Assembly: GCA_002104945.1 (NCBI GenBank)
Contig: MCFH01000015.1
Location: 847,806-911,805, forward strand
Length of the DNA: 64,000 nt
Direction: 5' to 3'
Source: Piromyces finnis finn
Taxonomy: Eukaryota > Fungi > Neocallimastigomycota
Shown: positions 9,480 through 28,805 of the stretch, piece after piece
Layout: each line of letters begins with the position of its first letter
Numbering within the stretch: position 1 is the first letter of the stretch
The notes under the pieces: generated by a model
Databases searched by the model: none
What the model was told of the DNA's origin: nothing
Seen by the model: only the letters and a program-made list of their open reading frames with translations
Translations under genes and position numbers: made by a program

Positions 9480-9920
9480 AATGATTTAAACTCTTATAAT
9501 AGAAATAAATAAGTATAATTCACTAGATTATAATCTGAATATCACTATTAATTCCTACTTAAATCTAATAATAATATTATTTATCTATCTAGTATTATCA
9601 CTTATGCCTATTTTCTTATTATTATTTCTTATTATCTTTTATATCGTTTCTTCTCTTTTAATATTTATTAATTCTCTTTTATTAAATACTCTTTGTTGTA
9701 ATTAAGGTTTTTAGTCTTTTTTAATTAATTTTATTTATAATTTTTATTTTAGTTATTGCTATAAGTGTTATTAATTAAATCAATAATTGTTAGCTTATAA
9801 ATTTATATATTAAATTTTTATTAAACCTAAAATACTTAAAGTAGAATTATTATTAGTAAAATTAAAGGTTAAATAGGAATTCCTATGCTCTTACATTTTT
9901 CTGAATCAGTCGTACCATAC

Positions 9921-10418: not shown

Positions 10419-10428
10419 CATACAACTA

Positions 10429-11021
10429 TGTCACAATAACATATATAAAAATTTAAAAAATTTGGACACATGAAAAAAATTAAAAATTTTTTTAAAATTT
10501 GAAAATTTGAAAATTTGAAAAAATTTCAAATTATAAAATTTCTAATATTCGAAATTATTAAATTTTTTTTAATAATTATTAAAATTTTATTATAAAAAAT
10601 TTTTATTTTTAAATTTATTAACTATTTACAATAATTATTAATTATTAATTTATAAAAATTAAATATTTTATAATTAGATAATAATTAATTAAAATTAAAA
10701 AATGTAATAATTAAAATTGTTCATGTATAAAAAGAACAAAAATTGACAAAAATTACGAAGTTTTAGCATTAGTAATTTTTAACTTAAAGTTAATAAAATT
10801 TATAAACTCCTATAAAACCTAAAACTTTAAAAATTTTAATATTTTTAATAACTTAATATATGCTGATATTAAGTTATTGCTAAAATAAAAATATTATTTA
10901 ATTTTCTTTATATAAATATTATTAGCTTTACGCCTTCAATAGGAAAGCGTATTATATTTGTTAATTAATATAACTAGTGTGCTTACCACACTTTTCTTTA
11001 ATAAAAAATCGCTTTTTGACA
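10429..11021 (+). repeat. 5' LTR of B
   Basis: Direct repeat of 28185-28805; an inverted copy lies at 35658-36261. Confidence 0.92.
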
Positions 11022-11102
11022 TTACTAACGCTTATTATAAAAGTGCGCTAAGCACCAATTAGTTAGTAATTATTAATAACTAAATATAATAATTAAAGTT
11101 TA

Positions 11103-14100
11103 ATGGGAAAATCTCCACTTACACCTATTAAAGTGGATACAAAAGAATTTTTTAACCGCCTACAAACTACCAAGAGAGAACGTTCCCCAGGAAATACTCC
11201 CGTAAGAAAATCAAAGATGCCTAATCATTCCGGACAAATTAATGCTTCTACGAGTAATCCTACTCAGAAGCCAACTACTAATGAGGATCTCAAGGCCCTC
11301 ATTGAGTCTTTAACTGCTACCTTAACTGGGAATATCAATCAGTTAAAGGTTGATATTCAAGCTACCAGAAGGGAAAACGAAAGTCTCAATGATCGTTTGA
11401 CTGTTTTGGAAAACTCTACTCAAGTTATTATGGGTAAGATGGCTACTTTAGAAGTCAACGATGCTAGGAAAGACAATCAACTCGCTGATATCAAAGCTCA
11501 TATCAGCAAAGCTACTCAAAGAGTTGATGAGTTGTCTACTCCCGTTACTCCTTCTACTACTACCCCTCACGAACCTGACGGTGACGTCATCATGGGAGAT
11601 GCTTCGCCTCCAAACGTCGCTGAAAAAATGCTTTCTTACTCAGGAGAAAGTATTCAACTACGCAGATTCATCCGTCGATGCGAACACCACTTCTTAAGAC
11701 ACATCAAGTTCTATGGAAACAATGAAGCTATGAAAGTAAACTTCATTGAAGATTGTCTTACTGGTGATGCTGCAGATTGGTACGTTGTTGAACAAGCAGA
11801 CTTCCAGGAATCTCATCCGAATAGAAAAGTTCTTTACGAAGCTTTGAGTAAGAGATTCCTTAACCCGAAGGATATCAACATCACCAAAATCGACCTGATG
11901 AAGCTCAGACATAGTTGGGGAAAAGCTTCCGAATACTTAGGAAAATTCTCCCAATATGTCAAATTAATTGGATGTTCCGAAGACATTCAATTAACCATCA
12001 TGCTTTTCCAAGTTAGACCTACCGTGAACCACGCCTTTAGTAAGTTAACTTCTGATAGACAAACGTTAGAAGAACTGAAGAATCTTCTAATCAAATATGA
12101 TGCTTCCAAGGATACTTATTACGATGATACTTTGGAAAGACAAGCTAACTACAAGGACAAAGAGCCCTTAATAGCTAATTTATTAGGTATTCATGGCAGT
12201 CTTTATTCCAAAAACCCTAACAAGAATAACAATCGTAATAACAACCAAAGGAACAACAATAACAGCAATCGCCCGTCTAACCAAAAAGGAAAAGGCTCCA
12301 GTAACTTGGATAGCAAGTCTAGTACTAAAAATCCCAATAAAAGTACTAAACCTAATAATGGTACTTCATACTCCAGCTATCTCTGTGAAGTAGAAGAGCA
12401 AGATATCTTAGAGCTACCAAATCCTGATCCGGAGAAGTATCCCATCGTGAAGACTAGTGTAAAAACTTCTAAAGGATCTAGACAGGTTATCACTTCGTCT
12501 CTCTTAGATTCTGGCTCTACTACCAATGTAATCCATATGGATTTAGTGAAGAAACTAGGAATTAAGACCATACCAGCTGATACTGTTGTAAAGGTCATGG
12601 GAGGTAATGTCCTAATGCATTACATCACAGAAGAGTTCAACATTGTAATGAACTTATCTTCTTTAGGAAGAACTCGAGAAGAAGTTCGTCAATACAAACT
12701 TCGATGCCACGTAGCTGATCAGCTTCCTTCTTCGATTCTCCTAGGTTCTAAGTTCATGAAAACCAACTTCTTCTGTATCTTTACACAACCTGACCATTCC
12801 TTTACAGTTAAAATTGGTCCTGTTCCTTTCTCCAACCATAATGGATCTGAGATTAAATCTCCTAACTTTAGGAATGATTTGAAGAAATCTACACCTCTTC
12901 ATGAATTACGCGAAGTCCTCCAAAAGAGACAGTTCGTCTTAGACGAACAATGGGACAAAGAACATTTGAACGATCGAGGAAGAATCGTGATCAAGAAACA
13001 ATCAAGCAAGAAACCCAATAATAACCATGTCCACAACACAGAAACGATAACCCTATCCAACGAAGAAAAACTGAAAATCGAACAAAGGCTTCTTAAACAA
13101 AAACAAAACAATCAAAGTTTTATAATCTCAACTGACCATAAAGAAGGACTCGACGAATACATTATCAAGGAAATACAAAACCTCCCTCAAGAATTACAAG
13201 AATTCAAGCAAGTTTTCGGACCACCACCAAAGGGCAAGATATTTAATAGGAAAAACGAAAATTTAAATTCATACTTACCTTATGATAAGGAAAAAGTTAA
13301 GAGGCTACCCATGATGCCTCACATCAAATTAGACAAAAACCAAGAAGACGCTCTTGAACAAGAATTTCATGAACTTGAACAGAACGGAAAAATCGAGAGA
13401 ACTCGATCCAGTTCGGCTTGCAACGTCTTTAATGCACCTAAGAAAGATGGTACATTCAGAACTGTGTTTAATTACGTTATGGTTAATAATTGCCTACACC
13501 ATAACAACTACCCAATACCTAAAATAATCGAACTTGTACACAGAGCTGCCCAGTATAAGTTCCATATTTTACTAGATTTAAGAAATGCCTATAACCAAAT
13601 CTATCTCGAGCCCAAATATCGTTTCCTTACAAGCTTTAGATTTAAAAACCAAACCTATCAATGGAAAGTTCTTCCCTTTGGACTCTCCACTGCCCCATCC
13701 ATTTTCCAATCCATTCTCAACCTCTTATTAAAAATATACTTGAATAAAGGTATTGATATCTACCTAGATGATATACATATTTATGCCCAAGATAAGCAAG
13801 AATGCCTCAGACTTTGTGCTTACACTTTAAAGAAGTTCAAAGAAAATAATTTCTTTTGTAAACTTGAAAAATGCTTATTTTTCCCAGAAGAATTCGAATA
13901 TTTAGGGTACAAAATTGGATATGAAAAAATACGTCCTATTTCTAATAAAACTTTAGACATTAAAGAATGCAAAACACAAAAGGAATATCAGCAACTATAT
14001 GGCTTTCTTAATTATTTCAAAGACTACGTAAATAACTTTACCGAAAGAACAAAATATATCTCTATGGGACTATCAAATAAAACCACTACTTGGACTAAAG

Positions 14101-16118
14101 AAATGAATGACGAACTAAATTATTTTAAGAAATTAATTCCTAACCTTCCAAATTTAGCACCGTTTAAACCTAACCACGATATCTTTATCCTAACCGACGC
14201 ATCGGAAATCGGAATTGGCGCCGCAATTTTTCAAGCGGGGGCCCCCAATGTACATATTCAAAATTACATTTTAAGTAACGTATACAAGAATAATATTAAT
14301 CGTGAAATCATCGAAAACTTATTTGGTCATAAAAATTGGACATTAAACGGACATTCTGAAGTAAATGGACGTGAAAATAAGAAAATCGATAAAGCCAAGA
14401 ATCGTGAAGATATCAATCCACCAATTAAATTGAATGAAGCAATGAATACATTTGAAATAAAAAACAATAGTTTATCCGAATTAAAAAAGTATTTAAAACC
14501 CATAGGCTTTTTCTCCAGAAAATTGAATTCTACAGAAAGAAAATATTCAACATTCGACAGAGAATTATTAGCTCTCTCGGACACCTTACAACACTACCGG
14601 TTACTTCTCCAACAAGGACAAAAAATATACTGTGCGACGGACCATAAGAATTTGGTAATCTACATAAATTCCGGATCCAAAGTCGAAACTAATCGTAAGT
14701 TAAGATTATTTGAAAATATTTGCAATTACAATATAATACCTTATTATATCGAAGGAAAAGACAACAAGATTGCAGATCTACTCTCAAGATTTATTAAAAT
14801 GGAAAACGAAACCGAAAATACTAGCAACAGAAGAAACCCACAGCAGGTCAACAATATTGAAGAAACAAATTCTTTGGATTTCTTAGTAAATGCCATTGAA
14901 CTCAAGGACTTAGAATCTACCAACAAAGAAGAAGATAACGAGGAACCAGACTTAAAAGTCTTTAAGACTACCATAAGTTCGCTAATGGAAAATAATAAAC
15001 AAAAGGAACTAAAAAATTATCTTATCAATTGGTACAAGAACCAGGATATGTTATTCAAATCATTGAAGGAACAAATAGTAAACCTACTAGAAGAAAACAC
15101 TTTCTTCGAAAAACAATATAAAAAACAAGTTAATCTCAGATGTCAAGACCTAAAAGATGTATTGGATAAAAGAGAACATTTTAGTTCAGAAATAAAAAAG
15201 GTGAAAGATGAATTACAACTTCTACAAACTGGCAACACCCAAGGAGAAACTAAAAGAAAATTTGATAGACTTAATCAAAAAATAAACGATTTAAGGTATG
15301 ACCTCAATCCAAAGGCTGAAAGAATAGAACTCACTAAGAAAGTAAACCATTCGGAAAAACAGATAACTGCCCAATGGAAAGAGATAGAAAACCTCAAGAA
15401 AATAATAGAAAAAATGGATAAAAGGATAACTGCCCTAATCATTGACAACGAAGAAGACTCAAATCTGGATAAATCAACTTCCATTCCAACAGAAACAGTC
15501 TTCATAGTCGATGATCAGAATCCTGAACTAGTAGAATCTATCAACGGTATACCTTTGGAATATGAAGATTTATATGAAGCCTTCAATGAAGAACGAGCCG
15601 ATGAACTTCCTGAACATCGTGTATATGATTGTTCTATTGATTTGAAACCTAATGCTTCATTATTTTATGGGCCAATTTATCCAACTACTCCTACTGAACG
15701 TCAATTTATTAAGGAGTATATTGAAGAAAACTTGAATAAAGGATTCATTAGAAAATCCCGATCTCCTGCTGGACATCCAGTTCTACTCCAAGATAAGAAG
15801 GATGGTAGTCTCAGATTTTGCGTTGACTATCGCAAGCTCAACGACCAAACTATCAAGAATGCCTATCCGCTACCTTTAATCCTATCAGTCTTTGAATCAA
15901 TGAAAGGTGCTAACTATTTCACTAAGTTAGACCTCAAGTCAGCTTATAATTTAATTAGGATTAAAGAAGGTGACGAATACAAGACTGCATTTAGGACGGC
16001 ATTTGGTCACTTTGAGTACTTAGTCATGCCTTTTGGACTAACTAATGCTCCTGCAGTTTTCCAAGCTTTCATTAATGATATCTTTAGTGATCAAATTAAT
16101 AAGTACGTTCAAGTGTAA
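11103..16118 (+). CDS. B polyprotein part 1: Gag, protease, captured K-type RT-RNase H-coiled coil, N-half of native RT
   Basis: Gag YSGES..LTGDAADWY; LLDSGS; RT1 LDLRNAY, LPFGL, YLDD; RH1 LTDAS, RELLAL, TDHKNL, IADLLSR; RT2 LDLKSAY, MPFGL. Ends at a TAA replacing the Y of YLDD. Confidence 0.93.
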   Translation: MGKSPLTPIKVDTKEFFNRLQTTKRERSPGNTPVRKSKMPNHSGQINASTSNPTQKPTTNEDLKALIESLTATLTGNINQLKVDIQATRRENESLNDRLTVLENSTQVIMGKMATLEVNDARKDNQLADIKAHISKATQRVDELSTPVTPSTTTPHEPDGDVIMGDASPPNVAEKMLSYSGESIQLRRFIRRCEHHFLRHIKFYGNNEAMKVNFIEDCLTGDAADWYVVEQADFQESHPNRKVLYEALSKRFLNPKDINITKIDLMKLRHSWGKASEYLGKFSQYVKLIGCSEDIQLTIMLFQVRPTVNHAFSKLTSDRQTLEELKNLLIKYDASKDTYYDDTLERQANYKDKEPLIANLLGIHGSLYSKNPNKNNNRNNNQRNNNNSNRPSNQKGKGSSNLDSKSSTKNPNKSTKPNNGTSYSSYLCEVEEQDILELPNPDPEKYPIVKTSVKTSKGSRQVITSSLLDSGSTTNVIHMDLVKKLGIKTIPADTVVKVMGGNVLMHYITEEFNIVMNLSSLGRTREEVRQYKLRCHVADQLPSSILLGSKFMKTNFFCIFTQPDHSFTVKIGPVPFSNHNGSEIKSPNFRNDLKKSTPLHELREVLQKRQFVLDEQWDKEHLNDRGRIVIKKQSSKKPNNNHVHNTETITLSNEEKLKIEQRLLKQKQNNQSFIISTDHKEGLDEYIIKEIQNLPQELQEFKQVFGPPPKGKIFNRKNENLNSYLPYDKEKVKRLPMMPHIKLDKNQEDALEQEFHELEQNGKIERTRSSSACNVFNAPKKDGTFRTVFNYVMVNNCLHHNNYPIPKIIELVHRAAQYKFHILLDLRNAYNQIYLEPKYRFLTSFRFKNQTYQWKVLPFGLSTAPSIFQSILNLLLKIYLNKGIDIYLDDIHIYAQDKQECLRLCAYTLKKFKENNFFCKLEKCLFFPEEFEYLGYKIGYEKIRPISNKTLDIKECKTQKEYQQLYGFLNYFKDYVNNFTERTKYISMGLSNKTTTWTKEMNDELNYFKKLIPNLPNLAPFKPNHDIFILTDASEIGIGAAIFQAGAPNVHIQNYILSNVYKNNINREIIENLFGHKNWTLNGHSEVNGRENKKIDKAKNREDINPPIKLNEAMNTFEIKNNSLSELKKYLKPIGFFSRKLNSTERKYSTFDRELLALSDTLQHYRLLLQQGQKIYCATDHKNLVIYINSGSKVETNRKLRLFENICNYNIIPYYIEGKDNKIADLLSRFIKMENETENTSNRRNPQQVNNIEETNSLDFLVNAIELKDLESTNKEEDNEEPDLKVFKTTISSLMENNKQKELKNYLINWYKNQDMLFKSLKEQIVNLLEENTFFEKQYKKQVNLRCQDLKDVLDKREHFSSEIKKVKDELQLLQTGNTQGETKRKFDRLNQKINDLRYDLNPKAERIELTKKVNHSEKQITAQWKEIENLKKIIEKMDKRITALIIDNEEDSNLDKSTSIPTETVFIVDDQNPELVESINGIPLEYEDLYEAFNEERADELPEHRVYDCSIDLKPNASLFYGPIYPTTPTERQFIKEYIEENLNKGFIRKSRSPAGHPVLLQDKKDGSLRFCVDYRKLNDQTIKNAYPLPLILSVFESMKGANYFTKLDLKSAYNLIRIKEGDEYKTAFRTAFGHFEYLVMPFGLTNAPAVFQAFINDIFSDQINKYVQV

Positions 16119-18512
16119 TTGGATGATATCATTATCTACTCCAAGACCCTTGAAGAACATGTTCAACATGTTAGAAATGTTCTTCAATTAATCATTGAAA
16201 ACAACTTAGTTGCGAAACTCAAAAAATGTGAGTTTCACAAAGCTGAAATCGAATTTTTGGGTCACGTAATCAGTAAGGAGGGAATCAAAACTGATCCTCA
16301 CAAAATTGAAGCAGTTAAGAACTGGCCTATCCCCACTACTGTGAAAGAAGTTCAGTCTTTCTTAGGGTTATGCAATTACTACCGTCGCTTTATCTCTAAC
16401 TTTTCTAAAATTGCAAAACCATTATACAACTTAACTAAGAAAGGCGTCACTTTCATATGGACAGACGAGTGTAATAGAGCATTTAATCAACTTAAAGAAT
16501 TTCTTACTTCAGCTCCAGTTTTACTTTGTCCTGATCACGATAAACCATTCATAGTTGAATGTGACGCAAGTGACTTTGCTATCGGGGGAGTACTTTCACA
16601 AAAAGGTGATGATGGAGACCTGCATCCAGTTTATTACTTTTCTAAAACCCTTCATGATGCAGAACTTAATTACTCTATCACCGAAAAGGAACTCTTAGCA
16701 ATTCGTCAAGCTTTTATCGAATGGCGTCACTTACTTCAAGGTGCAAAATATCCTATTACCGTTTATTCAGACCATCGAAACTTGCTTTTTGCTACCAAAC
16801 CGCAACTTCTATCCCAAAGACAAGCTCGTTGGCAAGAATACTTTGCTACTTTTGATTTCAAGATTATCTATCGACCAGAAAAGAAAAATGGTAAAGCTGA
16901 TGCTCTCTCTCGTAGATCCGACCATATGCTCACAGTTGGTAAGGATATAAGTGAATCATCCTTACTTAAACCAACTCAATTAGAAGGATTCAACGAAGAT
17001 GAATGCTACTTCTCTATGGAAACTAGCTTCATTGACGACATTAAGCAGTGCTACCTTCAAGATGAAACCGCTTGTCAGATTCTTAAGGATCTTGAAGTTC
17101 CAAATAGTGATCATCCTTGGATTCTTCAAGATGGCCTTTTAATAAGAACCAAACATCCGGAGCAAGTATATGTTCCAAGTCAACTAAGACTCTTAGTTAT
17201 TAAGCTCAACCATGATGCACCCACTGCCGGTCACTTGGGAGTCGATAAGACTTATGACATTCTTAAACGTAATTTCTATTGGGTTAATATGCGTCAAGAT
17301 GTCGAGTCTTATATTCGAAGCTGTAGTGTATGCAAGGCAATGAAAACCGATCACCATGCTCCTTATGGTAATATGATCCGTGTCCCTCTTCCGGAACTTC
17401 CATGGCAACATCTACAAATGGACTTTATCACGGACTTACCATCAAGACCTTGTAACTCTACCTTACCATTCGACTCTACCAATCCGAACCACTATCAAGG
17501 TACCATAATGGTTACTACTTGCTACTTAACTAAGATGATACACTTAGTTGGGTTCAAACATTTATCCACTGCTAAGGAAACTGCTACTGCTTTTCTTAAC
17601 CATATTTTCAAACTGCACGGATTCCCCTTATCTATTGTTACAGACCGTGGTACTCAGTTCGAAAGTCGTCTTTGGTTCCACTTGATGGAATTCTTTAATA
17701 TCGATCACCACTCTGCTACTACTGGCCATCACCGCACTGTTGGACAAGTAGAACGTAACAACGACTACGTCGAAACTTATCTTCGTTGCTACTTAGCTCA
17801 ATTTGATGATCTCAGTTGGATGGATCATTTGTACTTAGCTGAATTTTGCTACAACAATTCCATCCATGCTTCCACCAAGCAACCACCATTTCTCTCCGTC
17901 TATAATTATCAAGTTCACGCAAACCCACAAATTGCAGACCTTGTTTCTTCTTTAGGACTTCATCCCCTCATCGATAGCTTCTCCCATAACTTAGCTGACC
18001 TTAAGCATACTCTCGAAGTCAGTCGTACCCGTTATCTCGATGAAAAGGATAAGCACCTTTATCACAACTTTAAGCGCTTCAAGGTCCACGATCTTGTTTG
18101 GCTTCGCAAACCCGCTAATTATCATCCTCCATTAGCGTTCAAGCTCCAAACCCGCAAGTATGGTCCATACAAGGTCACTGGTGTCGATGAATCTAAGCTC
18201 AACTACCGCCTTGATTTATCTACCTCACCTTTCCCTCGTGTCTACCCCGTATTCCACATCAGTGAACTCGAACCATATCATCCCACTCCTCACCATCTAT
18301 TGCTCAACCATCCCAACTCCAATGAAATCACCAAGATCCTTAGTTCTCGTAAATCGGGTCATTTTTACGAGTACTTAGTCACTTTTACTGACTTATCTCA
18401 ACGTTGGATCAATGCTGACACCATTGATAAGGATGACTACTACAGCACCCTTTTAGCTGATTACCAACGTCGCGCTTACCAACAATTCACCAATTCCGTC
18501 CCAGATTCTTAA
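16119..18512 (+). CDS. B polyprotein part 2 (same frame after one stop): RT C-half, RNase H, integrase, chromodomain-like
   Basis: LDDIIIY; ECDAS; HDAPTAGH..CSVC; MDFI, TDRG, QVER; RKYGPY; EYLVTF..RWI. Confidence 0.92.
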   Translation: MDDIIIYSKTLEEHVQHVRNVLQLIIENNLVAKLKKCEFHKAEIEFLGHVISKEGIKTDPHKIEAVKNWPIPTTVKEVQSFLGLCNYYRRFISNFSKIAKPLYNLTKKGVTFIWTDECNRAFNQLKEFLTSAPVLLCPDHDKPFIVECDASDFAIGGVLSQKGDDGDLHPVYYFSKTLHDAELNYSITEKELLAIRQAFIEWRHLLQGAKYPITVYSDHRNLLFATKPQLLSQRQARWQEYFATFDFKIIYRPEKKNGKADALSRRSDHMLTVGKDISESSLLKPTQLEGFNEDECYFSMETSFIDDIKQCYLQDETACQILKDLEVPNSDHPWILQDGLLIRTKHPEQVYVPSQLRLLVIKLNHDAPTAGHLGVDKTYDILKRNFYWVNMRQDVESYIRSCSVCKAMKTDHHAPYGNMIRVPLPELPWQHLQMDFITDLPSRPCNSTLPFDSTNPNHYQGTIMVTTCYLTKMIHLVGFKHLSTAKETATAFLNHIFKLHGFPLSIVTDRGTQFESRLWFHLMEFFNIDHHSATTGHHRTVGQVERNNDYVETYLRCYLAQFDDLSWMDHLYLAEFCYNNSIHASTKQPPFLSVYNYQVHANPQIADLVSSLGLHPLIDSFSHNLADLKHTLEVSRTRYLDEKDKHLYHNFKRFKVHDLVWLRKPANYHPPLAFKLQTRKYGPYKVTGVDESKLNYRLDLSTSPFPRVYPVFHISELEPYHPTPHHLLLNHPNSNEITKILSSRKSGHFYEYLVTFTDLSQRWINADTIDKDDYYSTLLADYQRRAYQQFTNSVPDS

Positions 18513-18844
18513 TCTGGACCCCACTTATTAGTATCCCACCTACTAGTGTCTACCACCCTTACTCCTTCACTACCCACCTATCGCCACTACCCCACCTACT
18601 ACCCACAACTCCGCTACCCACTAGTCGCCACCACTACAACTACCAACCACTATTCCGCTACCCAACCACCCTCTTTCGCCTTTGCCCTCAACCCTCAAAT
18701 TCCGCAACCTTTTCCGCATCCCAAAATCCGTATCCCCTCGAGTCATATCATTTCCCTAACCTTCACGTGTAGTCTCCATTTCTGAAGAATCCACGTGATA
18801 CCCTCACAACTTTTCTTTGAACACTTTTACACCTCACTTTTTCA

Positions 18845-18889
18845 ACACTTAGAAAAATTTTGAGAATTTTCAAAAAATGGAAATTCTCA
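18845..18889 (+). repeat. Left arm of perfect 45-bp inverted repeat
   Basis: ACACTTAGAAAAATTTTGAGAATTTTCAAAAAATGGAAATTCTCA equals the reverse complement of 28051-28095. Confidence 0.95.
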
Positions 18890-20062
18890 ATTTTTGAAAA
18901 AAAATCTAAGGTAGCACGTAACGTATTACGAAGAGCAATGAGAAATAGAATGGTGCATAATAAAGCAAGACAATTGGCTCAAAATTTAGGACGTAGAGCA
19001 AGAGATAGGATTGTACGAAGAAATCGTAGGATTGGCAATAGACAATTCGAATCAGTTAAAGGAAATGCTGCTGGTACAACCCATACTACAACACGTATGA
19101 TAGTACGTAGAACACCACGCGAACAACGATTTTTACGCAAATTGTTTAAAACAAACCCTACTAAAAACAAATATATAAACAGATTTGGTTTTTCTTGGAT
19201 GGGTGCTGGTGCAGCCTCAAAAACTATTTGGTATAGTGTTTGTCATTTAAAGTTCAATAATTTATGTAATTATTTACAAGGTCGTAAAATCTTACCGACA
19301 CAGAGTATAGAAGGAGTTTCTGCTACAGTAACCAATGATAAAGCCGTGGGAAATTCCCCATCAGCTGGTATTTACGTTGGTAAATGTACATTCCATTACG
19401 AATTGTATAACCCAACTAATTATTTAATGACCGTATACATTTACGATTTAATTTGTAAATGTGATACACCACATCAAATAGCATATTCTGATGCTAATAA
19501 TGATGGTAATAGTGCCCCTGAAGCTTGTATGCAAAAGGGTTCAAAATCCATGACCGATGGAGGTTCTGCCCCAACATGGCAAGTTGCAGACCCTACACTC
19601 GAAATGGGTACATATTGGAATACTGTTGGTATGAAACCAACGGACTATCATTTATTTAATACGATTTGGAAAGTCAAAGGAATGAAAAAAATCATTTTAC
19701 CACCTGGATCATCACACCATCACGTGGTTATATACAACCCAAAAAAGAAGATAACCAATGCTAGTTTATTATACCCTAGAGAAACTAGACATACTAATAA
19801 TAAAATGGGTATTGGTGGTATTACACAAGCAACTTTATTTGGTTTTGAAGGTCAAGTTGCAACTGAAGACAATCAACGTAGTGATGGTACAATTGTAGGT
19901 ACATTACCTGGTAAATTATTAGTTAAATGTATTAAAAAGGTAAATATATGGGATCTTCCATGTAACTATCAATCAGTAACATCTGAAGATGATTTAGTAG
20001 CAACATGGACTAAACCAACTATATTCTCTGATTTAGTAGAAGTCAATGCAAGCTCTACATAA
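18860..20062 (+). CDS. CRESS-DNA-virus-like capsid protein (first in-frame ATG at 18938)
   Basis: Arg-rich N-terminus (RRARDRIVRRNRR), then YELYNPTN..VYIYDL, F..IWKV..KKIILPPG.SH.H.V, a pattern I recognise from STNV/gemini-like jelly-roll capsids. Convergent with Rep. No database search was possible. Confidence 0.8.
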   Translation: MRIFKKWKFSIFEKKSKVARNVLRRAMRNRMVHNKARQLAQNLGRRARDRIVRRNRRIGNRQFESVKGNAAGTTHTTTRMIVRRTPREQRFLRKLFKTNPTKNKYINRFGFSWMGAGAASKTIWYSVCHLKFNNLCNYLQGRKILPTQSIEGVSATVTNDKAVGNSPSAGIYVGKCTFHYELYNPTNYLMTVYIYDLICKCDTPHQIAYSDANNDGNSAPEACMQKGSKSMTDGGSAPTWQVADPTLEMGTYWNTVGMKPTDYHLFNTIWKVKGMKKIILPPGSSHHHVVIYNPKKKITNASLLYPRETRHTNNKMGIGGITQATLFGFEGQVATEDNQRSDGTIVGTLPGKLLVKCIKKVNIWDLPCNYQSVTSEDDLVATWTKPTIFSDLVEVNASST

Positions 20063-20063
20063 G

Positions 20064-20345
20064 AACACGTGACATACAACTAAGTTAACGTGTTTGATCC
20101 CTGTGAGCCGCAGGCTCTAGACCCTGGCCGTTGACTATCACATGTTTATATCTCATGGTGATCATGTGATGAGTCACACCCTCCCACTTATCCATAGCCA
20201 AGTGGTTCTGAGAGGATTGTTTCCTACTCTGGACGGACGGCTCTGGGGGAGTAGGAGGAACAGATTTTTTTATTATTTTTATTTAACACAAAATGTATAC
20301 AACACAAATATAATGTAATGTAATGTAAATATAATAAACTTTATT
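20064..20345. terminator. Structured 3' intergenic region between cap and rep, with opposed polyadenylation signals
   Basis: Several hairpins in 20064-20260. AATAAA-C-TTTATT at 20333-20345 abuts the Rep stop. Confidence 0.55.
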
Positions 20346-20476
20346 TAATATAATTTATTTTGTAAAACAATACAAGTACAATTTTTTTTTAAAAAGTTTA
20401 AGTGTTCAATATTTAAATTCTTATATAAATCTTCATTGGATAACCAAATCATTGGTTTTCCCCAATGAACCGTTCT
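20345..20476 (-). pseudogene. rep: C-terminal fragment of CRESS Rep (SF3 helicase motif C)
   Basis: RTVHWGKPMIWLSNED matches gemini/genomovirus-type motif C. Confidence 0.82.
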
Positions 20477-20563
20477 TTTAAAATTAAATTGCCTGTTCGT
20501 TTTAGTAAAAACTAACGGGGGCCTTTTCTTCAATGGTAACTAGATAATATGTAGCTATGGCTA
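20477..20563 (-). repeat. 3' terminal direct repeat of K
   Basis: TTTAAAATTAAATTGCCTGTTCG..GCTATGGCTA repeated at 27226-27312. Confidence 0.92.
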
Positions 20564-20941
20564 TATACTATTTCGGGTATTGGCCTACTTATCTTAGGAA
20601 ATCTAAAATACTTAAACCAATGTATATGTAGTATTGACGTTAAAGAGCCTACTTTAAGGAATTTTCACGTAAGTAAAACTCGTTTGTGATTTATGCGTTT
20701 TATATAATAATTTTATTTAATATGTTTTATTATAAGTTTATTTATAAGATCAAAGTTATTTAAAAGTTTGTTGTTTTATTAATTCTTTATCCTCTGTTGC
20801 TATATTGTCGAGGAAGACTATCTTTTTCTAGTGATTAATAATAACTAACAAATACTTTTAAAAGTTATAAAGTTTTATAAATAAATGAATTTTTTCGAAT
20901 TAATACGTTTGAGTTTAAAATTTTCGTTACAAATTTTATAT

Positions 20942-21045
20942 TACGAATTTAAATTACGAATTTTAACTACGAATTAAAACTACGAATTTTAACTACGAAT
21001 TAAAACTACGAATTTTAATCACGAATTTTAACCACGAATTTTAAA
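20942..21045. repeat. 8 x 13-bp tandem array (YACGAATTWWAAH) in the 3' region of K
   Basis: Units start at 20942, 20955, 20968, 20981, 20994, 21007, 21020, 21033. Confidence 0.9.
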
Positions 21046-21208
21046 TTAGAAAAAACTAAAGTTTTAAAATAATACATTTAGATGATATTTATACATGATT
21101 ATTAAATTTAGCTATAATATTATTAATAAACTATTACTAATAGAATTTTTAAAGTTATATTAAATATAAATAATTTTAACTAATTAGATTCATTTTTTGT
21201 GTTTAAAG

Positions 21209-22684
21209 TTAGTCAAATGTTTCTTGGTTCTTTTTCATTGGTTCATTTGTTAAATCGATTTCTATTTGAAAGTTCGAAAGTTTTCTTTTCTTAAGTTCAT
21301 TACTAATTACGGCTTCGGAAGCGGGGAAGATTTCCTTTAATTCGTTATCAATTATCAAAGCATTGATTCTTTTACTAATACTTTCGATTTTATTTCTAAG
21401 TTCTTCTGTTTCCTTCCATTGGGCAGTTAATTGTTTTTCCGTTTTATTAACCTTTCTAGTAAGTTCGATGCGTTCGGCCTTTGGGTTTAGATCATATCTA
21501 AGGTCGTTGATTTTTTGATTTAATTTGTTGAATTTTCTTTTAACTTCTACTTGAGTGTTTCCTGTTTGAAGAAGTTGAATTTCGTCTTTTACCTTTTTAA
21601 TTTCTTGATTAAACTGTTCCTTTCTGTCCAAGACTTCTTTTAAGTCTTCGCATCTTAAATTAATCTGCTTTTTATATTGTTTTTCATAATAAGTGTTTTC
21701 TTCTAATAGGTTAATAATTTGTTCTTTCAAGCTTTTGAATAGTTTATCCTGATTTCGATACCATTTGTATAGGTAATCCTTTAATTCTTCTTGTTTATTG
21801 CTTTCGATTAATGAATTGATTGTAACTTTAAAGACTTTGAAGTCGGTGTCTTCTTTCTTTTCATTATTGTTTGATGATTCCTTATCTTTTAATTCAATTG
21901 TGTTGATTATAAAATCTAGTGAGTTCATTTCCTCTATGTTGTTTATCTGTTGTGGATTAGCTATAGTATTATTGTTTACTTCATTACTTTGTTCCATTTT
22001 GATAAATCTTGATAATAGGTCCGCTATTTTGTTATCTTTTCCTTCTATGTAGCAAGGTATAACATTAAAATTGCAAATATTCTCGAATAGTCGTAGCTTT
22101 CTATTTGTTTCGACTTTGGAACCAGAGTTGATATAGATTACTAGGTTCTTGTGGTCCGTGGCGCAATAGATTTTTTGTCCCTGTTGAAGTAATAATCTGT
22201 AGTGATGAAGAGTATCTGAAAGGGCTAGCAGTTCACGATCAAAAGTCGAGTATTTTCTCTCAGTTGAATTTAGTTTTCTTGAAAAGAAACCTATTGGCTT
22301 TAAATATTTTTTAAGTTCTGTTAAACTATTATTCTTTATTTCAAATGTATTCATAGCCTCATTTAATTTCATTGGAGGATCGATATCTTCACGATTTTTG
22401 GCTTTATCGGATTTATTATTTTTGCGTCCATAATGTCCGTTATACGTCCACTTCTTATGACCAAATAGATTTTCGATTGTTTCACGATTGACATTATTCT
22501 TGTATACGTTACTTAAAATGTAATTTTGAACATGTACATGGGGGCCCTCCGCTTGGAAAATTGCGGCACCAATTCCGATTTCCGAGGCGTCGGTTAGAAT
22601 AAAAATGTCATGGTTAGGTTTGAAAGGGACTAAATCTGGAAGGTTAGGGATTAAATTTTTGAAGTAATTAAGTTCTTCGTCCAT
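21209..22684 (-). pseudogene. K RNase H plus C-terminal coiled-coil domain
   Basis: LTDASEIGIG, RELLAL, TDHKNL, IADLLSR. Joined to the upstream RT frame if 1 bp is restored near 22855. Confidence 0.88.
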
Positions 22685-22824
22685 TTCTTTGGTCCAGGCG
22701 GTGTTTTTGTTAGATAATCCTAAGGAAATGTTTTTTGTTTTTTCTGTAAAGTTATTAACATAATCTTTAAAGTAATTTAAGAATCCATAAAGTTGTTGAA
22801 ATTCTTTTGGAGAATTGCATTCTT

Positions 22825-24846
22825 TTATTTCAAGGTTTTTTTTAGATATTGGGCGGTTTTTTCGAAACCAATTTTGTAGCCTAAATATTCAAATTCTTCG
22901 GGGAAGAAAAGACATTTTTCAAGTTTACAAAATAAATTATTATCTTTAAATTTTTTAAGTGTATAGGCACATAGTTTAATACATTCTTCTTTGCTTTGAG
23001 CGTAGATATGGATGTCGTCCAAGTAAACATCGATTCCTTTATTCAAATAATCTTTTAATAATAAATTAAGAATAGATTGAAAGATAGAGGGCGCTGTTGA
23101 TAATCCGAAGGGTAAAACTTTCCATTGGTATGTTTGGTTCTTGAAACGGAAGCTTGTTAAGAAGCGATATTTCGGTTCTAGAAAAATTTGATTATAAGCG
23201 TTTCTAAGATCTAGGAGAATGTGATATCTATATTGAGCGGCTCTATGTACTAACTCAATGATTTTTGGAATCGGGTAGTTATTATGATGTAAGCAGTTAT
23301 TTACCATTACATAGTTGAAGACAGTTCTAAACGTACCATCCTTCTTTGGAACGTTGAATACATTGCATGCGGAACTGGATCTGGTTTTTTCGATCTTTCC
23401 ATTTTCCTCTAATTCACGAAACTCTTCTTCAAGGGCGTCTTCTTGTTCTTTATCGAGTTTAATGTGGGGCATCATTGGGAGCCTCTTTACCTTTTCCTTA
23501 TCGTAAGGTAAGTAAGCATTCAAGTTATTGACTTTCCTGTCAAATATTTTTCCTTTTGGAGGAAATTCAAAAACTTGTTTGTATTCTTGAAGTTCACTTG
23601 GCAAGTTTTGAATTTCCTTAATGATATATTCTTCCAAACCTTTTTTATGGTCGGTTGAAATAATAAAGCTTTGGTTATCTTGTTTTTGCTTGAGTAGTTT
23701 CTGCTCAATCCTTAGTTTTTCGTCTGTAGAGAGCGTTATTATTTCTGTATTATGAGTATGATTAGAATTTTTCTTATATTCATTTCGTTTTTTAGTAACG
23801 ATTTTTCCTCGATCGTCTAGATTTTCGTTATCCCATTTTTCATCGATTACATATTTTCTTTTTTGAAGTGTTTCTCTAAATTCTTCTTTTCTGTTATCCT
23901 CAAAGTTTAAGAAATACGGGAAGTACCTAGCTTCTAAATGTAATTTCCTCATTTTAAATAATAAATCATCGTTAAGGATTATTTTGTCATAATAGAAGTT
24001 CTTTTTCTGATGGTTAATCGGACCATTGATAGGCATAATGCTTAACCTAACATTAGTAAAATAAAATATTCCCTTTTTTATTTCTACTCCTATAGTGAGA
24101 TAACAATACTCTTTTATTTCGGTTATGGTTTCCCCCGATTGTATAGTGTGTGAAATGTTATTATTGTATCTTTTAATGTTGAGGTTGGCGATTATATTTT
24201 CACCAATACAATTTCCGGCAGAACCTGAGTCTAAGAGGACAATTCCATATTTGGCGTTATGTTTATTGTCTATAATAAGAGCCTTGTTATAATGCATCTT
24301 GCCGCCGAAACGTGGGTTATTTAAGAACTTCGAGTTTTTGATGGTTTCCATAGTGTTATGGATATACTCTTGAGTAAGTTTTTCCCGTTGAATGTGACTT
24401 ATACTTTTATCTATAATACTTTTTTCTGTATTGTGTGTGGAGGATGGCCTCCCTATAATGTTTTTAGTCTTTTTAGCTTCCAATTTTTTGGTGTATTTTG
24501 AATATTTTGAATTACTATTATTTATTGGTTTGACCTTATTATGAGTGAAGGTGGGTTTTGGATGGTTAACAAATAACTTGAGGTCTTCCCTCATACTTTT
24601 TTCACCTTCATCTTCTGCTATAGTTTTGAATATGATGTTGATAAGTTCTTGGTAAATAGTCTTGTTTTCTTCATCTTGGTCTTCAAAGTTTTCTCTTGGG
24701 TCTTTCACAGGTAGCTTAGGAAGTTTCTTCAGACATTTTTCGGCAAAGGCGGTAGGCAATGCCTTAGATAATTTCGTAAATCTATTATAGTATGGCTTAT
24801 TGATGTTATTACCAATTTTTTCCATATTTTCCAAAAATATTTCCAA
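22825..24846 (-). pseudogene. K Gag C-part, protease and RT
   Basis: LLDSGS; LDLRNAY, YQWKVLPFGL, YLDD. In frame with 25075-27078 across a single TAA (76 open codons between). Confidence 0.88.
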
Positions 24847-25074
24847 GTTTTCAATGTTAAGATAGTTTATCTTTAAAGTTTTCCATTTAACTTCCTGTTC
24901 TTGAAGGGAAAGTTCGCAGAATTCCCTTTCGAATTGATAAATGAAATTGTTAAGTTTTTGCCAAGTAGTGGATTCGTTCCACTCTAATTCTTTATTATCT
25001 AATTTATTTTTGTATATGTTTTCGAACCATTGTTTGACTTCCTTGCCTCCCCTAGCAATGATGGCGTCTCTGAT

Positions 25075-27078
25075 TTATATTTCGTTTACCCTTGGGCAAT
25101 AGGTCTGTAAATATGTTTTGAGACTAGATAGGTATTCATAACCGTTATGTTTGTTCTTGTACCTTGGTGCTGGCACTTTAAATAAAGACCTGAACCCTGA
25201 TATATTCTGCTGAATCTCAAGGGGTAAGTCTTGAAATTCTGTTGGGCGAAAGGGCACGACAGGACTAGTTCTTGAATCGTATATTCTAGGATGGGTCTTA
25301 TAGTGATAATATTGTTCACTTTTAGATCCTTTACTAAAATCAGGTTTAGTTTTCTGAATTAACCTCTTAAATTTTTCTCTATTTACTTCTTCAGGAGTAT
25401 TGTACATTTTTGTACGATGAAACTTGATGTCAAAATAATTTTGTTTTGCTTCTTCACTTTTAAAACCGGCGTTAAATCTTGAAGTAATATCTTCTTTATT
25501 ACTTGTATTATATGATGTAGAAGCTCTGTACGGATTTGAAGAGCTTTCTTTAATTGATTCAAGTTTTCTGTTGAAGTTTTCTTCTTGTTCTTTAAACTTA
25601 TCATTAATTCGTTTATTTTGTTCCTCTTCCCTATCGTCTAAGGTTGAATGTCCTATGAAGGACTTACTTCTGAACTTCGATATATTGCTGAAGGAAATTT
25701 CTTCGGTAGGATGATTAAAGCTTGTATCCATAAGATATTTTTCATTGATGAGGGTATTAATAATTCTTCTGCAAGTTTCATTTTTTGGTTGGATGGTTAC
25801 TTCTAAATTTTCTTGGTTAATAGTAGCAGCGAAGAGTTTCTTCGTCTTTACATTACTATGAAATAATAGCTTATATTCTTCTTGGATATTATCGATCTCG
25901 AGATGACCTATTTCATTAAGTTTCTTCTTTACAATAGTTATCTCCTTCAAACATTGTTTAATCGATTCATCTTGAATAGAGTTTTGAAGATTATCATATT
26001 TTGTTAGTAACTCTTCGTAAAGTTTCTTTACATTATTTAATTGTTCTTCGACTTGATGATTATTTTCTGAATTTAACAGTTCTGTTTCTAAAGTTTTAAT
26101 ACGTTCTTGTAATTGAGTTTGAAGAACTGCATGGTCTTCGAGGTTTTTACGGAAAGTTTCCATATTTTTATTGAACGATTCTTCAGCTTTACCATTAATG
26201 TGATATGTAGTGATTAATTGATCTTGAAGCTTCTTGATAGCCTCCTTAGAATCTATTCTAGTGGCCTGTAGTTTTTCGGCCATTTCGTTTTTAATATTAG
26301 TCGTAAGGTTATCGGTATAAGTGACGTTTTCGGTAGTTTGAAGTGTGATTTTTTCAATTTCTTTCTCCACTTGTGTTAATCTTTTTGTTAGATTGGTTAC
26401 CTCTTGGTTGTTGCCTTCAATAGCTGCTTGTTGTTGAGAAAGGCCGTTTTCGAGTGGTAATAAATCTTGAGACTTCGCAGTAGTAAGCTGACTTTGTTGA
26501 AGTTCTTCGCGAACCTCATTTACAGCGATGTTTAATTCTGTGGGCTTTACAGTGTTGAGATCTATAACATTTGCTAAATTTTGTACCTGATAAGCATCGG
26601 CCTTGTTAGCCATTTTTGTATCCATTTGTTCAATCCTTTTATTTTGTTCCATTATAGAAGTCTGTAAAGTCGCATTTATGGTGGCGGTAAGAGTCATAAA
26701 TTGAGTCTGCATTTGTTCCATGAAATTTTTCATCATGGTTTGCAGTTCCTCCTTGTTGCTATTAGTTTCAGTCTTTATTTCCTTATACATGTTATCCATG
26801 GATGCTAGTAGAGTGGCTCCATTATTCTCTGGATTATAGTCGAGTATTTGATTATTTCCGCCGTAAGTATTTTTAATCTCAGTTTCTAATGTTTTTATAT
26901 CTTCAATGTCGTCAGAGAGTTTTTCAAGATAATCATTTACTCCTGACATGCTTGATTTTGAGTCTTGTTCAATTTTCTCAATTTCCATTGAATGTTGATT
27001 TTCGGAGGACTTATTTATTTCTGCCTTTGGAGTATCCTTGTGGTCAACTGGTTGCTTTCCTTTGTTAGAATTTTTCAT
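25075..27078 (-). pseudogene. K coiled-coil/Gag-like N-terminal region
   Basis: Long heptad-rich ORF; the frame continues after TAA as IRDAIIARGGKEVKQWFE. Confidence 0.75.
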
Positions 27079-27225
27079 CTTGGATGGTAAGAATTTTGTT
27101 TTTGTCTTTGTAATAATAAATTTGACAGTTAAAATCGGTTAAGGACTTCTGGCCTTTAATTAGATTTCTTAATTATTTATACGAGTTTAGGTCCAAACAG
27201 GAATAGAATTAGAAGTTTTTTCTAA

Positions 27226-27323
27226 TTTAAAATTAAATTGCCTGTTCGTTTTAGTAAAAACTAACGGGGGCTTTTTCTTCAATGGTAACTAGATAATATG
27301 TAGCTATGGCTACATATTATCTA
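27226..27323 (-). repeat. 5' terminal repeat of K ending in a 15-bp perfect fold-back
   Basis: TAGATAATATGTAGC-TATG-GCTACATATTATCTA at 27290-27323. Confidence 0.9.
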
Positions 27324-28051
27324 AAGTACATATGCTTACCTAAGGACCTAGCCCATTCAGTTTTTCCGCTTCTACTTGGGCCTATGAGTATCAAGCTTTG
27401 TGGTCTGGACCACTCCCCAAAACGATGGAAATTTTCAAGCCAACCTTGAAAGTAGCATATTTTCCACAGCAAGTTCTTCTGGTAGCTTAAAGTCGCTTTG
27501 TGTGTATGGAGATATATACTCGCGTTTAGGTTCTTCAGGAAACATCTTCTTAATGTAGGCTATCCAGTTAGTAAAGTGGTTTGCGAATCTTGAGGCAAAT
27601 CCTTCTTCGTGTAGGCGTTGGATTACTTGATTTTGTGTTAACTTTTCGCTTAAGTAACGATCCCAGTCTGGATCTTTACTTTCATTTCCGTCAAGTTTTA
27701 AAAGATTCCCATTCAAAGGTAGATAAAGGACACTTATCTTCTTTGGTTAAGTATTTGATCATGGGAACAATACTTCTTGAGCCGTTTCTTTTGACAGTGG
27801 AAATATGTGGGTGTAAACCACACATATCAAAGTTAAACTCGTTTACGGTTACCCTTTTTGTAAACCTGATAAGCGTGAAAATGACGCTTTCCAGTCACGT
27901 GACCTGTTTCTTCGTCAACCATAAGCTTATCCACATGAACGTCGGCAATAACTAGTAGCTGTAAGCACGCGTATAATTCTTCTTTGGTTACATCACGTGC
28001 ATCGGCATAGGTTAATCCAAAGTCACGTTTTCTTAATACGAAAGCTGGCAT
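27323..28051 (-). pseudogene. rep: CRESS Rep, N-terminal part (HUH endonuclease and Walker A), three frameshifts
   Basis: Motif I FGLTY, motif II RHFHAY, GRS-like FDMCGLHPHI, motif III YLTKED, Walker A LILIGPSRSGKTEWARSLGKHMYF. Read by hand across three frame changes. Confidence 0.9.
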
Positions 28052-28095
28052 GAGAATTTCCATTTTTTGAAAATTCTCAAAATTTTTCTAAGTGT
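28051..28095 (-). repeat. Right arm of perfect 45-bp inverted repeat
   Basis: Reverse complement of 18845-18889; its last base is the A of the likely Rep ATG. Confidence 0.95.
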
Positions 28096-28184
28096 CGTGG
28101 AAGTGTCCATGTCCAAATTATTATGACGTGCCAGTGTCCATAATTTTTTGGGTCGTCCGGCGAAACGACCCTTAGGACGGGCAG

Positions 28185-28805
28185 TGTCACAATAACATAT
28201 AAAAATTTAAAAAATTTGGACACATGGAAAAAATTAAAAATTTTTTTAAAATTTGAAAATTTGAAAATTTGAAAAAATTTATTTTTTAAATTTTTATTAA
28301 AAAATTTCAAATTATAAAATTTCTAATATTCAAAATTATTAAATTTTTTTTAAAAATTATTAAAATTTTATTATAAAAAATTTTTATTTTTAAATTTATT
28401 AACTATTTACAATAATTATATTAATTATTAATTTATAAAAATTAAATATTTTATAATTAGACAATAATTAATTAAAATTAAAAAATGTAATAATTAAAAT
28501 TGTTCATGTATAAAAAGAACAAAAATTGACAAAAATTACGAAGCTTTAGCGTTAGTAATTTTTTAACTTAAAGTTAATAAAATTTATAAACTCCTATAAA
28601 ACCTAAAACTTTAAAAATTTTAATATTTTTAATAACTTAATATATGCTGATATTAAGTTATTGCTAAAATAAAAATATTATTTAATTTTCTTTATATAAA
28701 TATTATTAGCTTTACGCCTTCAATAAGAAAGCGTATTATATTTGTTAATTAATATAACTAGTGTGCTTACCACACTTTTCTTTAATAAAAAATCGCTTTT
28801 TGACA
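28185..28805 (+). repeat. 3' LTR of B
   Basis: Direct repeat of 10429-11021. Confidence 0.92.

What the first reader, a model, noticed from the sequence alone, without database searches (positions are those of the whole stretch)
12900..15452. LTR retrotransposon with two reverse transcriptases in one reading frame
Seen: between B's protease and its native RT sits a block of about 850 codons (ELREVLQKR..ITALIIDNE) with a full RT (YLDD at 13761-13772), a full RNase H and a coiled coil. It is collinear with and highly similar, but not identical, to K (21.2-23.9 kb). It has no stop or frameshift, while K has two lesions. Known: Ty3/gypsy Pol normally has one RT-RH; extra RNase H domains are known in plant Tat elements, but a second RT is not typical. 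Inference: in-frame capture, possibly maintained by selection.
Basis: partly seen in the sequence, partly recalled or inferred. Interest (0 to 1): 0.85.

Follow-up and report, generated by a model that had tools for sequence, protein, structure and literature searches.

The report
Chimeric gypsy element with two RTs
One retrotransposon copy in the gut fungus Piromyces finnis has picked up, in frame, the whole reverse-transcriptase/RNase H part of an unrelated retroelement family, but it looks like a single young, already decaying accident and not a selected new design.

Summary
The block is real. Window 12900-15452 is 851 open codons holding a Ty3-type RT (YLDD at 13761-13772), an RNase H and a helical tail. 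It sits in frame between element B's protease and its own RT, and it is 76% (nt) and 81-84% (aa) identical to neighbour K.

A B-family relative from a metagenome (P0057/L010) joins protease directly to RT, so the block is an insertion into the PR-RT linker. In an RT tree the two RTs fall in two deeply separated gypsy lineages.

There are two corrections. B's own RT carries an in-frame TAA exactly at the Y of its YLDD box (16116-16118). K has one lesion in the shared part, not two.

Selection is not supported:
- The open frame is expected by chance, because B's LTRs differ by only 1.2% and about one stop would be expected (P(0) about 0.4).
- Low dN against K reflects history before the capture.
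- No other copy or similar architecture turned up in about 5.8 billion proteins or 1.84 billion representatives. The only other instance is a redundant contig of the same locus.

B is an 18.4-kb composite that also holds an endogenous genomovirus-like Cap/Rep unit and K itself.

Best reading: a one-off illegitimate recombinant between two retroelement families.

The parts
10429..11021 (+). B 5' LTR (TGTCAC...TTGACA)
   Evidence: Aligns with 28185-28805: 7 mismatches in 591 columns plus 4 indels.
11103..12899 (+). B gag and protease (LLDSGS at about 12501), then the left part of the PR-RT linker
   Evidence: Pfam aspartyl protease hit, weak. 72% identical to P0057 residues 1-362.
12900..15452 (+). 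K-family module, 851 codons, in frame. The left junction lies within 12900-12917 and the right junction is at 15452.
13437..13916 (+). Module RT core (Pfam RVT_1; YLDD at 13761-13772)
   Evidence: The motifs LLDLRNAY, LPFGL and YLDD are conserved across the K family.
14220..14702 (+). Module RNase H, with an insertion of about 80 residues after the first catalytic Asp
   Evidence: Pfam RT_RNaseH and RT_RNaseH_2. Ty3 alignment. TDAS, E (STERKYS), TDHKN and NKIAD are conserved in K, P0001 and P0002.
14730..15452 (+). Module helical tail; ends at the ALIIDNE motif
   Evidence: AlphaFold2 gives helices 73-168 and 194-240, pLDDT 57. The same kind of tail ends the pol of K, P0001 and P0002.
15453..16115 (+). 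Right part of the native linker and N-terminal half of B's own RT
   Evidence: 81% identical to P0057 397-604 and 59-69% to elements E and A of the window.
16116..16118 (+). In-frame TAA at the Y of the native YLDD box
   Evidence: P0057/L010 has TAC here.
16119..18512 (+). Rest of the native RT, RNase H, integrase (H2C2, rve, SH3_Tf2-1), in the same frame
   Evidence: Pfam. 86% identical to P0057 606-1388.
18843..18886 (+). Left arm of a 44-nt perfect inverted repeat in B's 3' UTR
   Evidence: Reverse complement of 28054-28097. In L010 the outer 17-18 nt of the two arms are adjacent.
18911..20062 (+). Endogenous CRESS (genomovirus-like) capsid gene, lacking its first ~25 codons
   Evidence: 53% identical to a gemycircularvirus capsid protein; about 100 relatives on contigs of ~2.8 kb. 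98% identical to L014.
20344..20571 (-). C-terminal part of the endogenous Rep, including the left copy of the 95-nt duplication (20477-20571)
   Evidence: tblastn with the uninterrupted Rep of L015.
20572..27225 (-). Element K: ORF1 (27078-25075), ORF2 PR-RT (24846-22825), a 1-nt deletion near 22856, then RNase H and tail (22684-21209). It has no LTR and no integrase.
27226..28051 (-). N-terminal part of the endogenous Rep (FGLTY, HFHAY, YLTK, GPSRSGKT) with at least 3 frameshifts, including the right copy of the 95-nt duplication (27226-27320)
28054..28097 (+). Right arm of the 44-nt inverted repeat
28145..28184 (+). Conserved B-family sequence just before the LTR (small G+C hairpin and a purine-rich tract)
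   Evidence: Matches L010 4663-4702, directly upstream of its LTR.
28185..28805 (+). B 3' LTR

Best explanation
Element B is a Ty3/gypsy retrotransposon of Piromyces finnis. In one event it acquired, in its protease-RT linker, the complete post-protease part of the pol gene (RT, RNase H, helical tail) of a member of a different, integrase-less retroelement family, the K family.

The most likely route is two non-homologous template switches of reverse transcriptase between co-packaged B and K-family RNAs. That route keeps the sense orientation automatically, and the frame was kept by chance, perhaps helped by short similar coding motifs.

The donor was not the K copy next door but a distinct K-family lineage. 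The product is a single, young, non-functional copy. Its open frame reflects its youth and the donor's earlier purifying selection, not selection for a two-RT polyprotein.

Shown: the insertion, its origin, its single-locus status and B's decay. Inferred: the recombination mechanism.
For: - Empty-site relative. P0057/L010 has gag-PR joined to RT through a 41-aa linker. B has 27 + 20 linker residues around the block, so nothing native was lost.
- RT tree. Block + K + P0001 + P0179 + P0184 form a clade (100/99) on a long stem. B's native RT + P0057 (100/97) sit inside a clade with the window's single-RT elements A, E, F and G.
- The block spans almost exactly the K-family pol from just after the protease to the conserved motif near the natural C-terminus.
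- Synonymous sites between block and K are saturated while pN is 0.105, so the donor was a different, long-separated K-family lineage.
- There is no excess of amino-acid changes on the block's branch: 19 vs 24, 10 vs 22 and 8 vs 6 with three outgroups.
- LTRs differ at 7 of 591 sites. That predicts about 15 substitutions and 0.9-1.0 stops in the block (P(0) = 0.37-0.41), and 2.2-2.4 stops in the whole ORF, where one is seen, in the native YLDD.
- No protein with a K-type module followed by a B-type RT was found among about 5.8 billion clustered proteins (best coverage 22%) or 1.84 billion representatives.
- Both junctions are present in a second contig of the same assembly.
- The best match of the P0057 linker in K's ORF2a (RKDDFEEV / RKEEFRET) lies at the left junction.
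- Template switching that creates fused LTR elements is described in the literature (PMC1950507).
Against: - No second copy and no donor could be looked for by DNA in the full P. finnis assembly or in reads, so 'single copy' rests on gene models, protein databases and five fetched loci.
- K has its own gag-like ORF, so co-packaging with B RNA is not a given.
- The junction similarity is not statistically significant by itself (402 of 1000 shuffles reach the score).
- B has no target-site duplication, which points to later rearrangement and blurs its history.
- The chance of keeping the frame at both junctions is only about 1 in 9.
Confidence: 0.55

Rival explanations
1. DNA-level capture. A truncated cDNA of a K-family element was ligated into a chromosome break inside an already integrated B copy by end joining. 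Orientation and frame were kept by luck.
For: The same B copy took up two other foreign DNAs without any integrase signature. One is a genomovirus-like Cap/Rep fragment in the centre of a 44-nt palindrome of the 3' UTR. The other is K itself, which has no LTRs and no integrase and is flanked by a 95-nt duplication of Rep sequence. K-family members lack an integrase, so their DNA must enter chromosomes by other routes.
Against: Sense orientation plus both frames has a chance of about 1 in 18. No flanking duplication or filler is seen at the block. The endpoints coincide with domain boundaries of the K pol. No near-identical donor is known.
Confidence: 0.25
2. One reading: a functional two-RT retrotransposon lineage in which the captured RT-RNase H (and tail) is kept by selection, for example taking over or complementing the native RT.
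For: 851 codons are open. All RT and RNase H catalytic motifs are conserved. The block's branch is no longer than K's. The insertion is in frame in a tolerant linker. The only stop in B hits the native RT's active site, not the captured one.
Against: The open frame is expected by chance. The stop also cuts off RNase H and integrase, so this copy cannot make integrase. There is one locus only. The related single-RT elements A and E in the same window have 100% identical LTRs and intact ORFs. The successful design here therefore has one RT.
Confidence: 0.1
3. Assembly artefact: B-type and K-type reads were joined wrongly.
For: The region is very repeat-dense and is the last 64 kb of a contig. 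No reads could be inspected.
Against: The two junctions share no repeat that could mislead an assembler. The block is 24% different from the only K copy nearby. Both junctions recur in a second contig, MCFH01000152.1, which differs by 2 mismatches and 119 small gaps over 13.4 kb. The join is in frame at both ends.
Confidence: 0.03

Closest known systems
Complex or chimeric LTR retrotransposons made by abnormal template switching or by recombination before integration (Sabot & Schulman 2007, PMC1950507; Zeng & Sun 2018, bioRxiv 10.1101/452573)
   Same: One daughter element is built from two parent retroelement sequences. The event happens in the replication cycle and the products are usually dead ends.
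   Different: Those cases fuse whole elements or swap LTRs within a family. Here an internal pol segment of a different, deeply diverged family is spliced in frame into the pol ORF, giving two RT-RNase H units in one polyprotein. No target-site duplication is seen.
Tat/Athila and oomycete Ty3/gypsy elements and retroviruses with a second RNase H (Ustyantsev et al. 2015, PMC4408406; 2017, PMC5348765)
   Same: An extra catalytic domain was added to a gypsy-type pol.
   Different: In those lineages only an RNase H was added, downstream of the native one. It is fixed in whole lineages with many copies. Here a whole RT-RNase H-tail unit lies upstream of the native RT, in one copy.
Retroviral transduction and non-homologous recombination (copy-choice between co-packaged RNAs; established knowledge)
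   Same: Foreign sequence is inserted in sense orientation between two crossover points with little or no homology. The result is often replication-defective.
   Different: The captured sequence is another retroelement's pol, not a host gene.
Ordinary nested retrotransposon insertion
   Same: One element's sequence lies inside another, in a repeat-dense region.
   Different: The insert has no LTRs, no gag or protease, no target duplication, and it continues the host element's reading frame.

Membership tests
Ty3/gypsy (Metaviridae) LTR retrotransposon - element B | Two LTRs with TG...CA ends | tested here: met
   10429-11021 and 28185-28805, TGTCAC...TTGACA, 98.8% identical. The 3' end organisation is shared with relative L010.
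Ty3/gypsy (Metaviridae) LTR retrotransposon - element B | Domain order gag-PR-RT-RNase H-IN | tested here: met
   Pfam. The order is kept, with the extra RT-RNase H-tail unit between PR and RT.
Ty3/gypsy (Metaviridae) LTR retrotransposon - element B | Short target-site duplication | tested here: not met
   AACTA upstream against ATGTA downstream.
Chromovirus clade of Ty3/gypsy - element B | Chromodomain at the integrase C-terminus | tested here: inconclusive
   No PF00385 hit in B or P0057 at E <= 0.01. Relatives in the same RT clade (P0075, P0112) carry it.
Ty3/gypsy LTR retrotransposon - element K and the module's family | RT-RNase H of Ty3 type | tested here: met
   Ty3 structures 4OL8 and 7Q5B at E about 5e-57. 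The family sits inside the gypsy RTs on a long branch, away from a caulimovirid RT.
Ty3/gypsy LTR retrotransposon - element K and the module's family | Integrase after RNase H | tested here: not met
   The pol of K, P0001 and P0002 ends after a helical tail. No integrase follows P0001 within 5.8 kb in L001.
Ty3/gypsy LTR retrotransposon - element K and the module's family | LTRs | tested here: not met
   The only terminal repeat of K is 95 nt of duplicated Rep target sequence.
Dual-RNase H gypsy lineages (Tat, retroviruses) | A second RNase H alone, downstream of the first, present throughout a lineage | tested here: not met
   The extra unit holds an RT as well, lies upstream of the native RT, and is seen at one locus.
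Nested insertion of a complete element | The insert carries its own termini and a target duplication | tested here: not met
   The block starts after K's protease and ends before K's stop. The apparent flanking repeat is not beyond chance.
Template-switch chimeras (Sabot & Schulman type) | Fused parents inside one pair of LTRs with one target duplication | tested here: inconclusive
   One LTR pair encloses the chimera, but there is no target duplication. The mechanism cannot be read from a single copy.

The most novel reading that the evidence does not exclude
The chimera is, or recently was, a replicating lineage. In it an integrase-less K-family RT-RNase H unit has been fused into an integrase-bearing gypsy element. 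That would give a polyprotein with two different reverse transcriptases, in which the captured one can replace the native one. The only stop in B lies in the native RT's active site.
Probability: 0.08. Interest if true: 0.7.

Novelty: new variant of a known kind. Interest (0 to 1): 0.35.

Why it matters
Fixed additions of catalytic domains to LTR-retrotransposon pol genes are rare and have marked major transitions, such as the second RNase H of retroviruses and Tat elements. This copy shows the raw material for such a transition: an in-frame fusion of two deeply diverged RT-RNase H units made by recombination between families.

As it stands it is a single decaying copy. Its value is therefore as a documented example of inter-family pol recombination in an early-diverging fungus, and as a pointer to the unusual K family, which has no LTRs and no integrase. 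It is not evidence for a working two-RT element.

Tried and rejected
- Two scans of the JGI metagenome contigs, one with a junction-spanning peptide and one with a K-family RT alignment, gave nothing useful: no hit, and one distant locus.
- dN/dS of block against K: synonymous sites are saturated (NG86 pS 0.83), so omega cannot date or test selection after the capture.
- GC3 of the block (0.33) lies between B (0.35) and K (0.30), which is too close to be informative.
- A possible target duplication around the block (NDLKKSTPL / SNLDKSTSI) is not beyond chance: 710/2000 at nucleotide level and 539/2000 at protein level.
- Microhomology at the junctions: the best linker match in K's ORF2a falls at the left junction, but its score is reached in 402 of 1000 shuffles. 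Nothing notable was found at the right junction beyond II(D/E).
- I first read the 95-nt repeats around K as short LTRs. They are duplicated Rep sequence.
- I first thought the Cap/Rep unit might be ancestral cargo of the B family, because L010 keeps the hairpin arms. I rejected this because independent, differently linearised copies exist outside B (L014, L015) and the arms are B sequence, not viral.
- Pfam does not recognise the Rep fragments or the capsid.
- The cluster look-up of K's gag gene model found no further copies.
- The 165-residue spliced gene model that NCBI places inside the block (L012 5337-6173) was not reconstructed or searched, because its joined exons have no reference.
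- For the RT tree only, B's native pol was read through its stop with an X. No mended or consensus sequence was made.

Full report
**Source.** The window is the last 64 kb of contig MCFH01000015.1 of the Piromyces finnis assembly GCA_002104945.1, an anaerobic gut fungus. Locus L012 (record 857004-877867) is 100% identical to window 9199-30062, and proteins of the same contig are named P. finnis. The window is extremely AT-rich (16% G+C between elements). It consists almost entirely of retroelements. It is not human sequence, and these are not elements of animals, people or crops.

**Observation.** ORF 11103-16118 (+) is open for 1671 codons.
- Window 12900-15452 lies in that frame. It begins HELREVLQKR and ends ITALIIDNE, with YLDD at 13761-13772.
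- Pfam finds RVT_1 and the RT-associated RNase H families.
- The block aligns with the solved Ty3 RT/RNase H (4OL8, 7Q5B) at E about 5e-57 through both domains. There is an insertion of about 80 residues in the RNase H.
- The RT motifs and the four RNase H acidic residues are conserved in the block, K, P0001 and P0002.
- The last ~240 residues are predicted as long helices at low confidence.
- The block matches K (23868-21341, minus strand) at 75.7% over 2541 columns with only seven small gaps, and at 84% / 81% amino-acid identity.
- Upstream of ELREVLQKR the similarity to K disappears within a few residues.

Two details need correcting.
- B's own RT is interrupted by TAA at 16116-16118, where the relative has TAC for the Y of YLDD. 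The frame then continues to 18512.
- K has one lesion in the shared part, a 1-nt deletion near 22856.

**It is an insertion into a B-family element.** The best database relative of B, P0057 on ENA contig L010, matches B's gag-protease at 72%, the first half of the native RT at 81% and the rest of pol at 86%. It joins protease and RT through a 41-residue linker. B has 27 and 20 linker residues on either side of the block. The block is therefore a clean in-frame addition to a poorly conserved linker.

L010 also fixes B's 3' end. Its pol stop is followed by a hairpin, a conserved stretch that matches window 28145-28184, and an LTR that matches 28185 onward. B therefore runs from 10429 to 28805, which is 18.4 kb. 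Its LTRs differ at 7 of 591 aligned sites plus four indels. No target-site duplication is visible.

**Origin of the block.** In a maximum-likelihood tree of 42 RT cores the block groups with K (91/95) inside a clade with P0001, P0179 and P0184 (100/99). That clade sits on a very long stem.
- B's native RT groups with P0057 (100/97), within a clade that also holds the window's single-RT elements A, E, F and G (98/95).
- The two RTs of B are about 33% identical.
- The K family has a gag-like ORF1 and an ORF2 with protease, RT, RNase H and a helical tail, and it then stops.
- No integrase follows in K, P0001, P0002 or within 5.8 kb downstream in L001. The ORF1-ORF2 layout recurs in metagenome contig L017.
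- The block covers this pol from just after the protease to a conserved motif near the natural C-terminus.
- That motif, ALIIDN, also occurs 13 residues before K's protease. Whether it is a processing site is only a guess.

**Selection.**
- Between block and K, pN is 0.105 while synonymous sites are saturated. The two lineages therefore separated long ago and evolved under strong constraint. Almost all of that time can predate the capture.
- With three outgroups the block's branch has no more amino-acid changes than K's: 19 vs 24, 10 vs 22 and 8 vs 6. Its terminal branch in the tree is shorter, 0.055 against 0.10. This rules out a long neutral period but not a recent capture.
- With LTR divergence of 1.2%, about 15 substitutions and 0.9-1.0 new stops are expected in the block since integration. 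P(no stop) is therefore 0.37-0.41.
- For the whole 7.4-kb ORF, 2.2-2.4 stops are expected and one is seen.
- The open frame therefore carries no evidence of selection.

**Copy number.**
- A search with the whole 1671-residue product against about 5.8 billion clustered proteins found nothing covering more than 22% of it.
- A full HMMER scan of 1.84 billion representatives with protease + block + native RT found no protein in which a K-type unit is followed by a B-type RT. The many-RT proteins at the top of that list are tandem or nested gypsy fragments in gene models.
- Two metagenome scans were empty.
- The only other instance is contig MCFH01000152.1. It matches window 9081-22622, including the upstream flank, with 2 mismatches and 119 small gaps. 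That makes it a redundant assembly of the same locus. It does support both junctions independently of the main contig.
- A DNA search of the whole P. finnis assembly or its reads was not possible with the tools available.

**Context.** Compared with L010, B carries two further foreign inserts.
- Between two perfectly complementary 44-nt arms in its 3' UTR (18843-18886 and 28054-28097) lies a CRESS-DNA virus fragment. It holds a capsid gene (53% identical to a gemycircularvirus capsid) and a Rep gene with HUH and Walker motifs but several frameshifts.
- Other P. finnis loci hold the same virus outside B. One has the origin stem-loop and TAATATTAT, and one has an uninterrupted Rep.
- K itself sits inside that Rep, flanked by a 95-nt duplication of Rep sequence and without LTRs.
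- This B copy has thus accumulated insertions that do not look integrase-made, and it lies in a repeat graveyard at a contig end.
- Elements A and E in the same window have 100% identical LTRs and intact single-RT ORFs.

**Mechanism.** What is shown:
- An internal pol segment of a K-family element was joined in sense and in frame into the PR-RT linker of a B-family element.
- The donor was not the neighbouring K.
- The copy is young, single and already broken.

What is inferred is how this happened.
- I favour two non-homologous template switches during reverse transcription of co-packaged RNAs. This fixes the orientation and is a described source of fused LTR elements (PMC1950507).
- The best match of the native linker within K's first pol piece lies at the left junction, but its score is not significant.
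- The main rival is end-joining of a truncated K-family cDNA into a break in the integrated copy. The integrase-independent insertions next door make that plausible.
- A selected two-RT lineage is not excluded, but nothing positive supports it.
- An assembly artefact is unlikely.

**Comparison with what is known.** Extra RNase H domains in Tat elements, oomycete gypsy elements and retroviruses are lineage-wide additions of a single domain (PMC4408406, PMC5348765). Fixation of additional domains is regarded as rare (PMC9289625). Full-text searches found no description of an LTR retrotransposon with two RT domains. This copy is therefore a new variant of the known class of recombinant LTR elements, and there is no evidence that it works.

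Noticed in passing
window 18843-20571 and 27226-28097; loci L014 9600-12250, L015 9500-11900, L016 9974-10429: An endogenous genomovirus-like CRESS-DNA virus (capsid plus Rep) sits exactly between the two arms of a 44-nt palindrome in B's 3' UTR. The capsid is 53% identical to a gemycircularvirus capsid and has about 100 relatives on ~2.8-kb gut-metagenome contigs. P. finnis has at least three more copies outside B. One has the origin stem-loop with TAATATTAT, which suggests that these viruses infect anaerobic gut fungi.
   Followed up: partly
window 20477-27320 (minus strand): Element K and its relatives (P0001, P0002, L017) encode a gag-like ORF1 and PR-RT-RNase H-helical tail but no integrase. 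K has no LTRs and is flanked by a 95-nt duplication of the Rep sequence it interrupts. An integrase would not make such a duplication. How the family integrates is unexplained.
   Followed up: partly
window 16116-16118: A nonsense codon (TAA for TAC) lies exactly at the tyrosine of the native RT's YLDD box in B. It is the only stop in 7.4 kb of gag-pol.
   Followed up: yes
window 10424-10428 and 28806-28810; 28805-29272 vs 35658-35202: B has no target-site duplication. The sequence downstream of its 3' LTR is repeated next to a third, inverted LTR copy (36262-35658). This suggests later recombination or duplication around B.
   Followed up: partly
window 275-7157 (minus strand) and 47289-53545 (plus strand): Two gypsy elements, A and E, have 100% identical LTRs (729 and 603 nt) and uninterrupted polyprotein ORFs of 1619 and 1529 residues. 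They are probably very recent, possibly active, insertions.
   Followed up: no
K ORF2: window about 24279-24262 and 21358-21341 (minus strand); B 15435-15452: The hexapeptide ALIIDN occurs twice in K's pol, 13 residues before the protease DSG and 49 residues before the stop. The captured block in B ends at the second occurrence. It may be a processing site.
   Followed up: no
locus L013 (MCFH01000152.1 10023-23444): A 23-kb contig of the same assembly duplicates window 9081-22622 with 2 mismatches and 119 small indels. It is a redundant, less polished contig of the same locus.
   Followed up: yes
window 20930-21040: A tandem array of a 13-nt unit (CTACGAATTTTAA-like, about 8 copies) lies in K's 3' untranslated region.
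   Followed up: no
database proteins P0177, P0180, P0181, P0185: Several metagenome proteins consist of two or three tandem copies of only the N-terminal half of a gypsy RT. This is an odd repeated architecture, unrelated to the present chimera.
   Followed up: no
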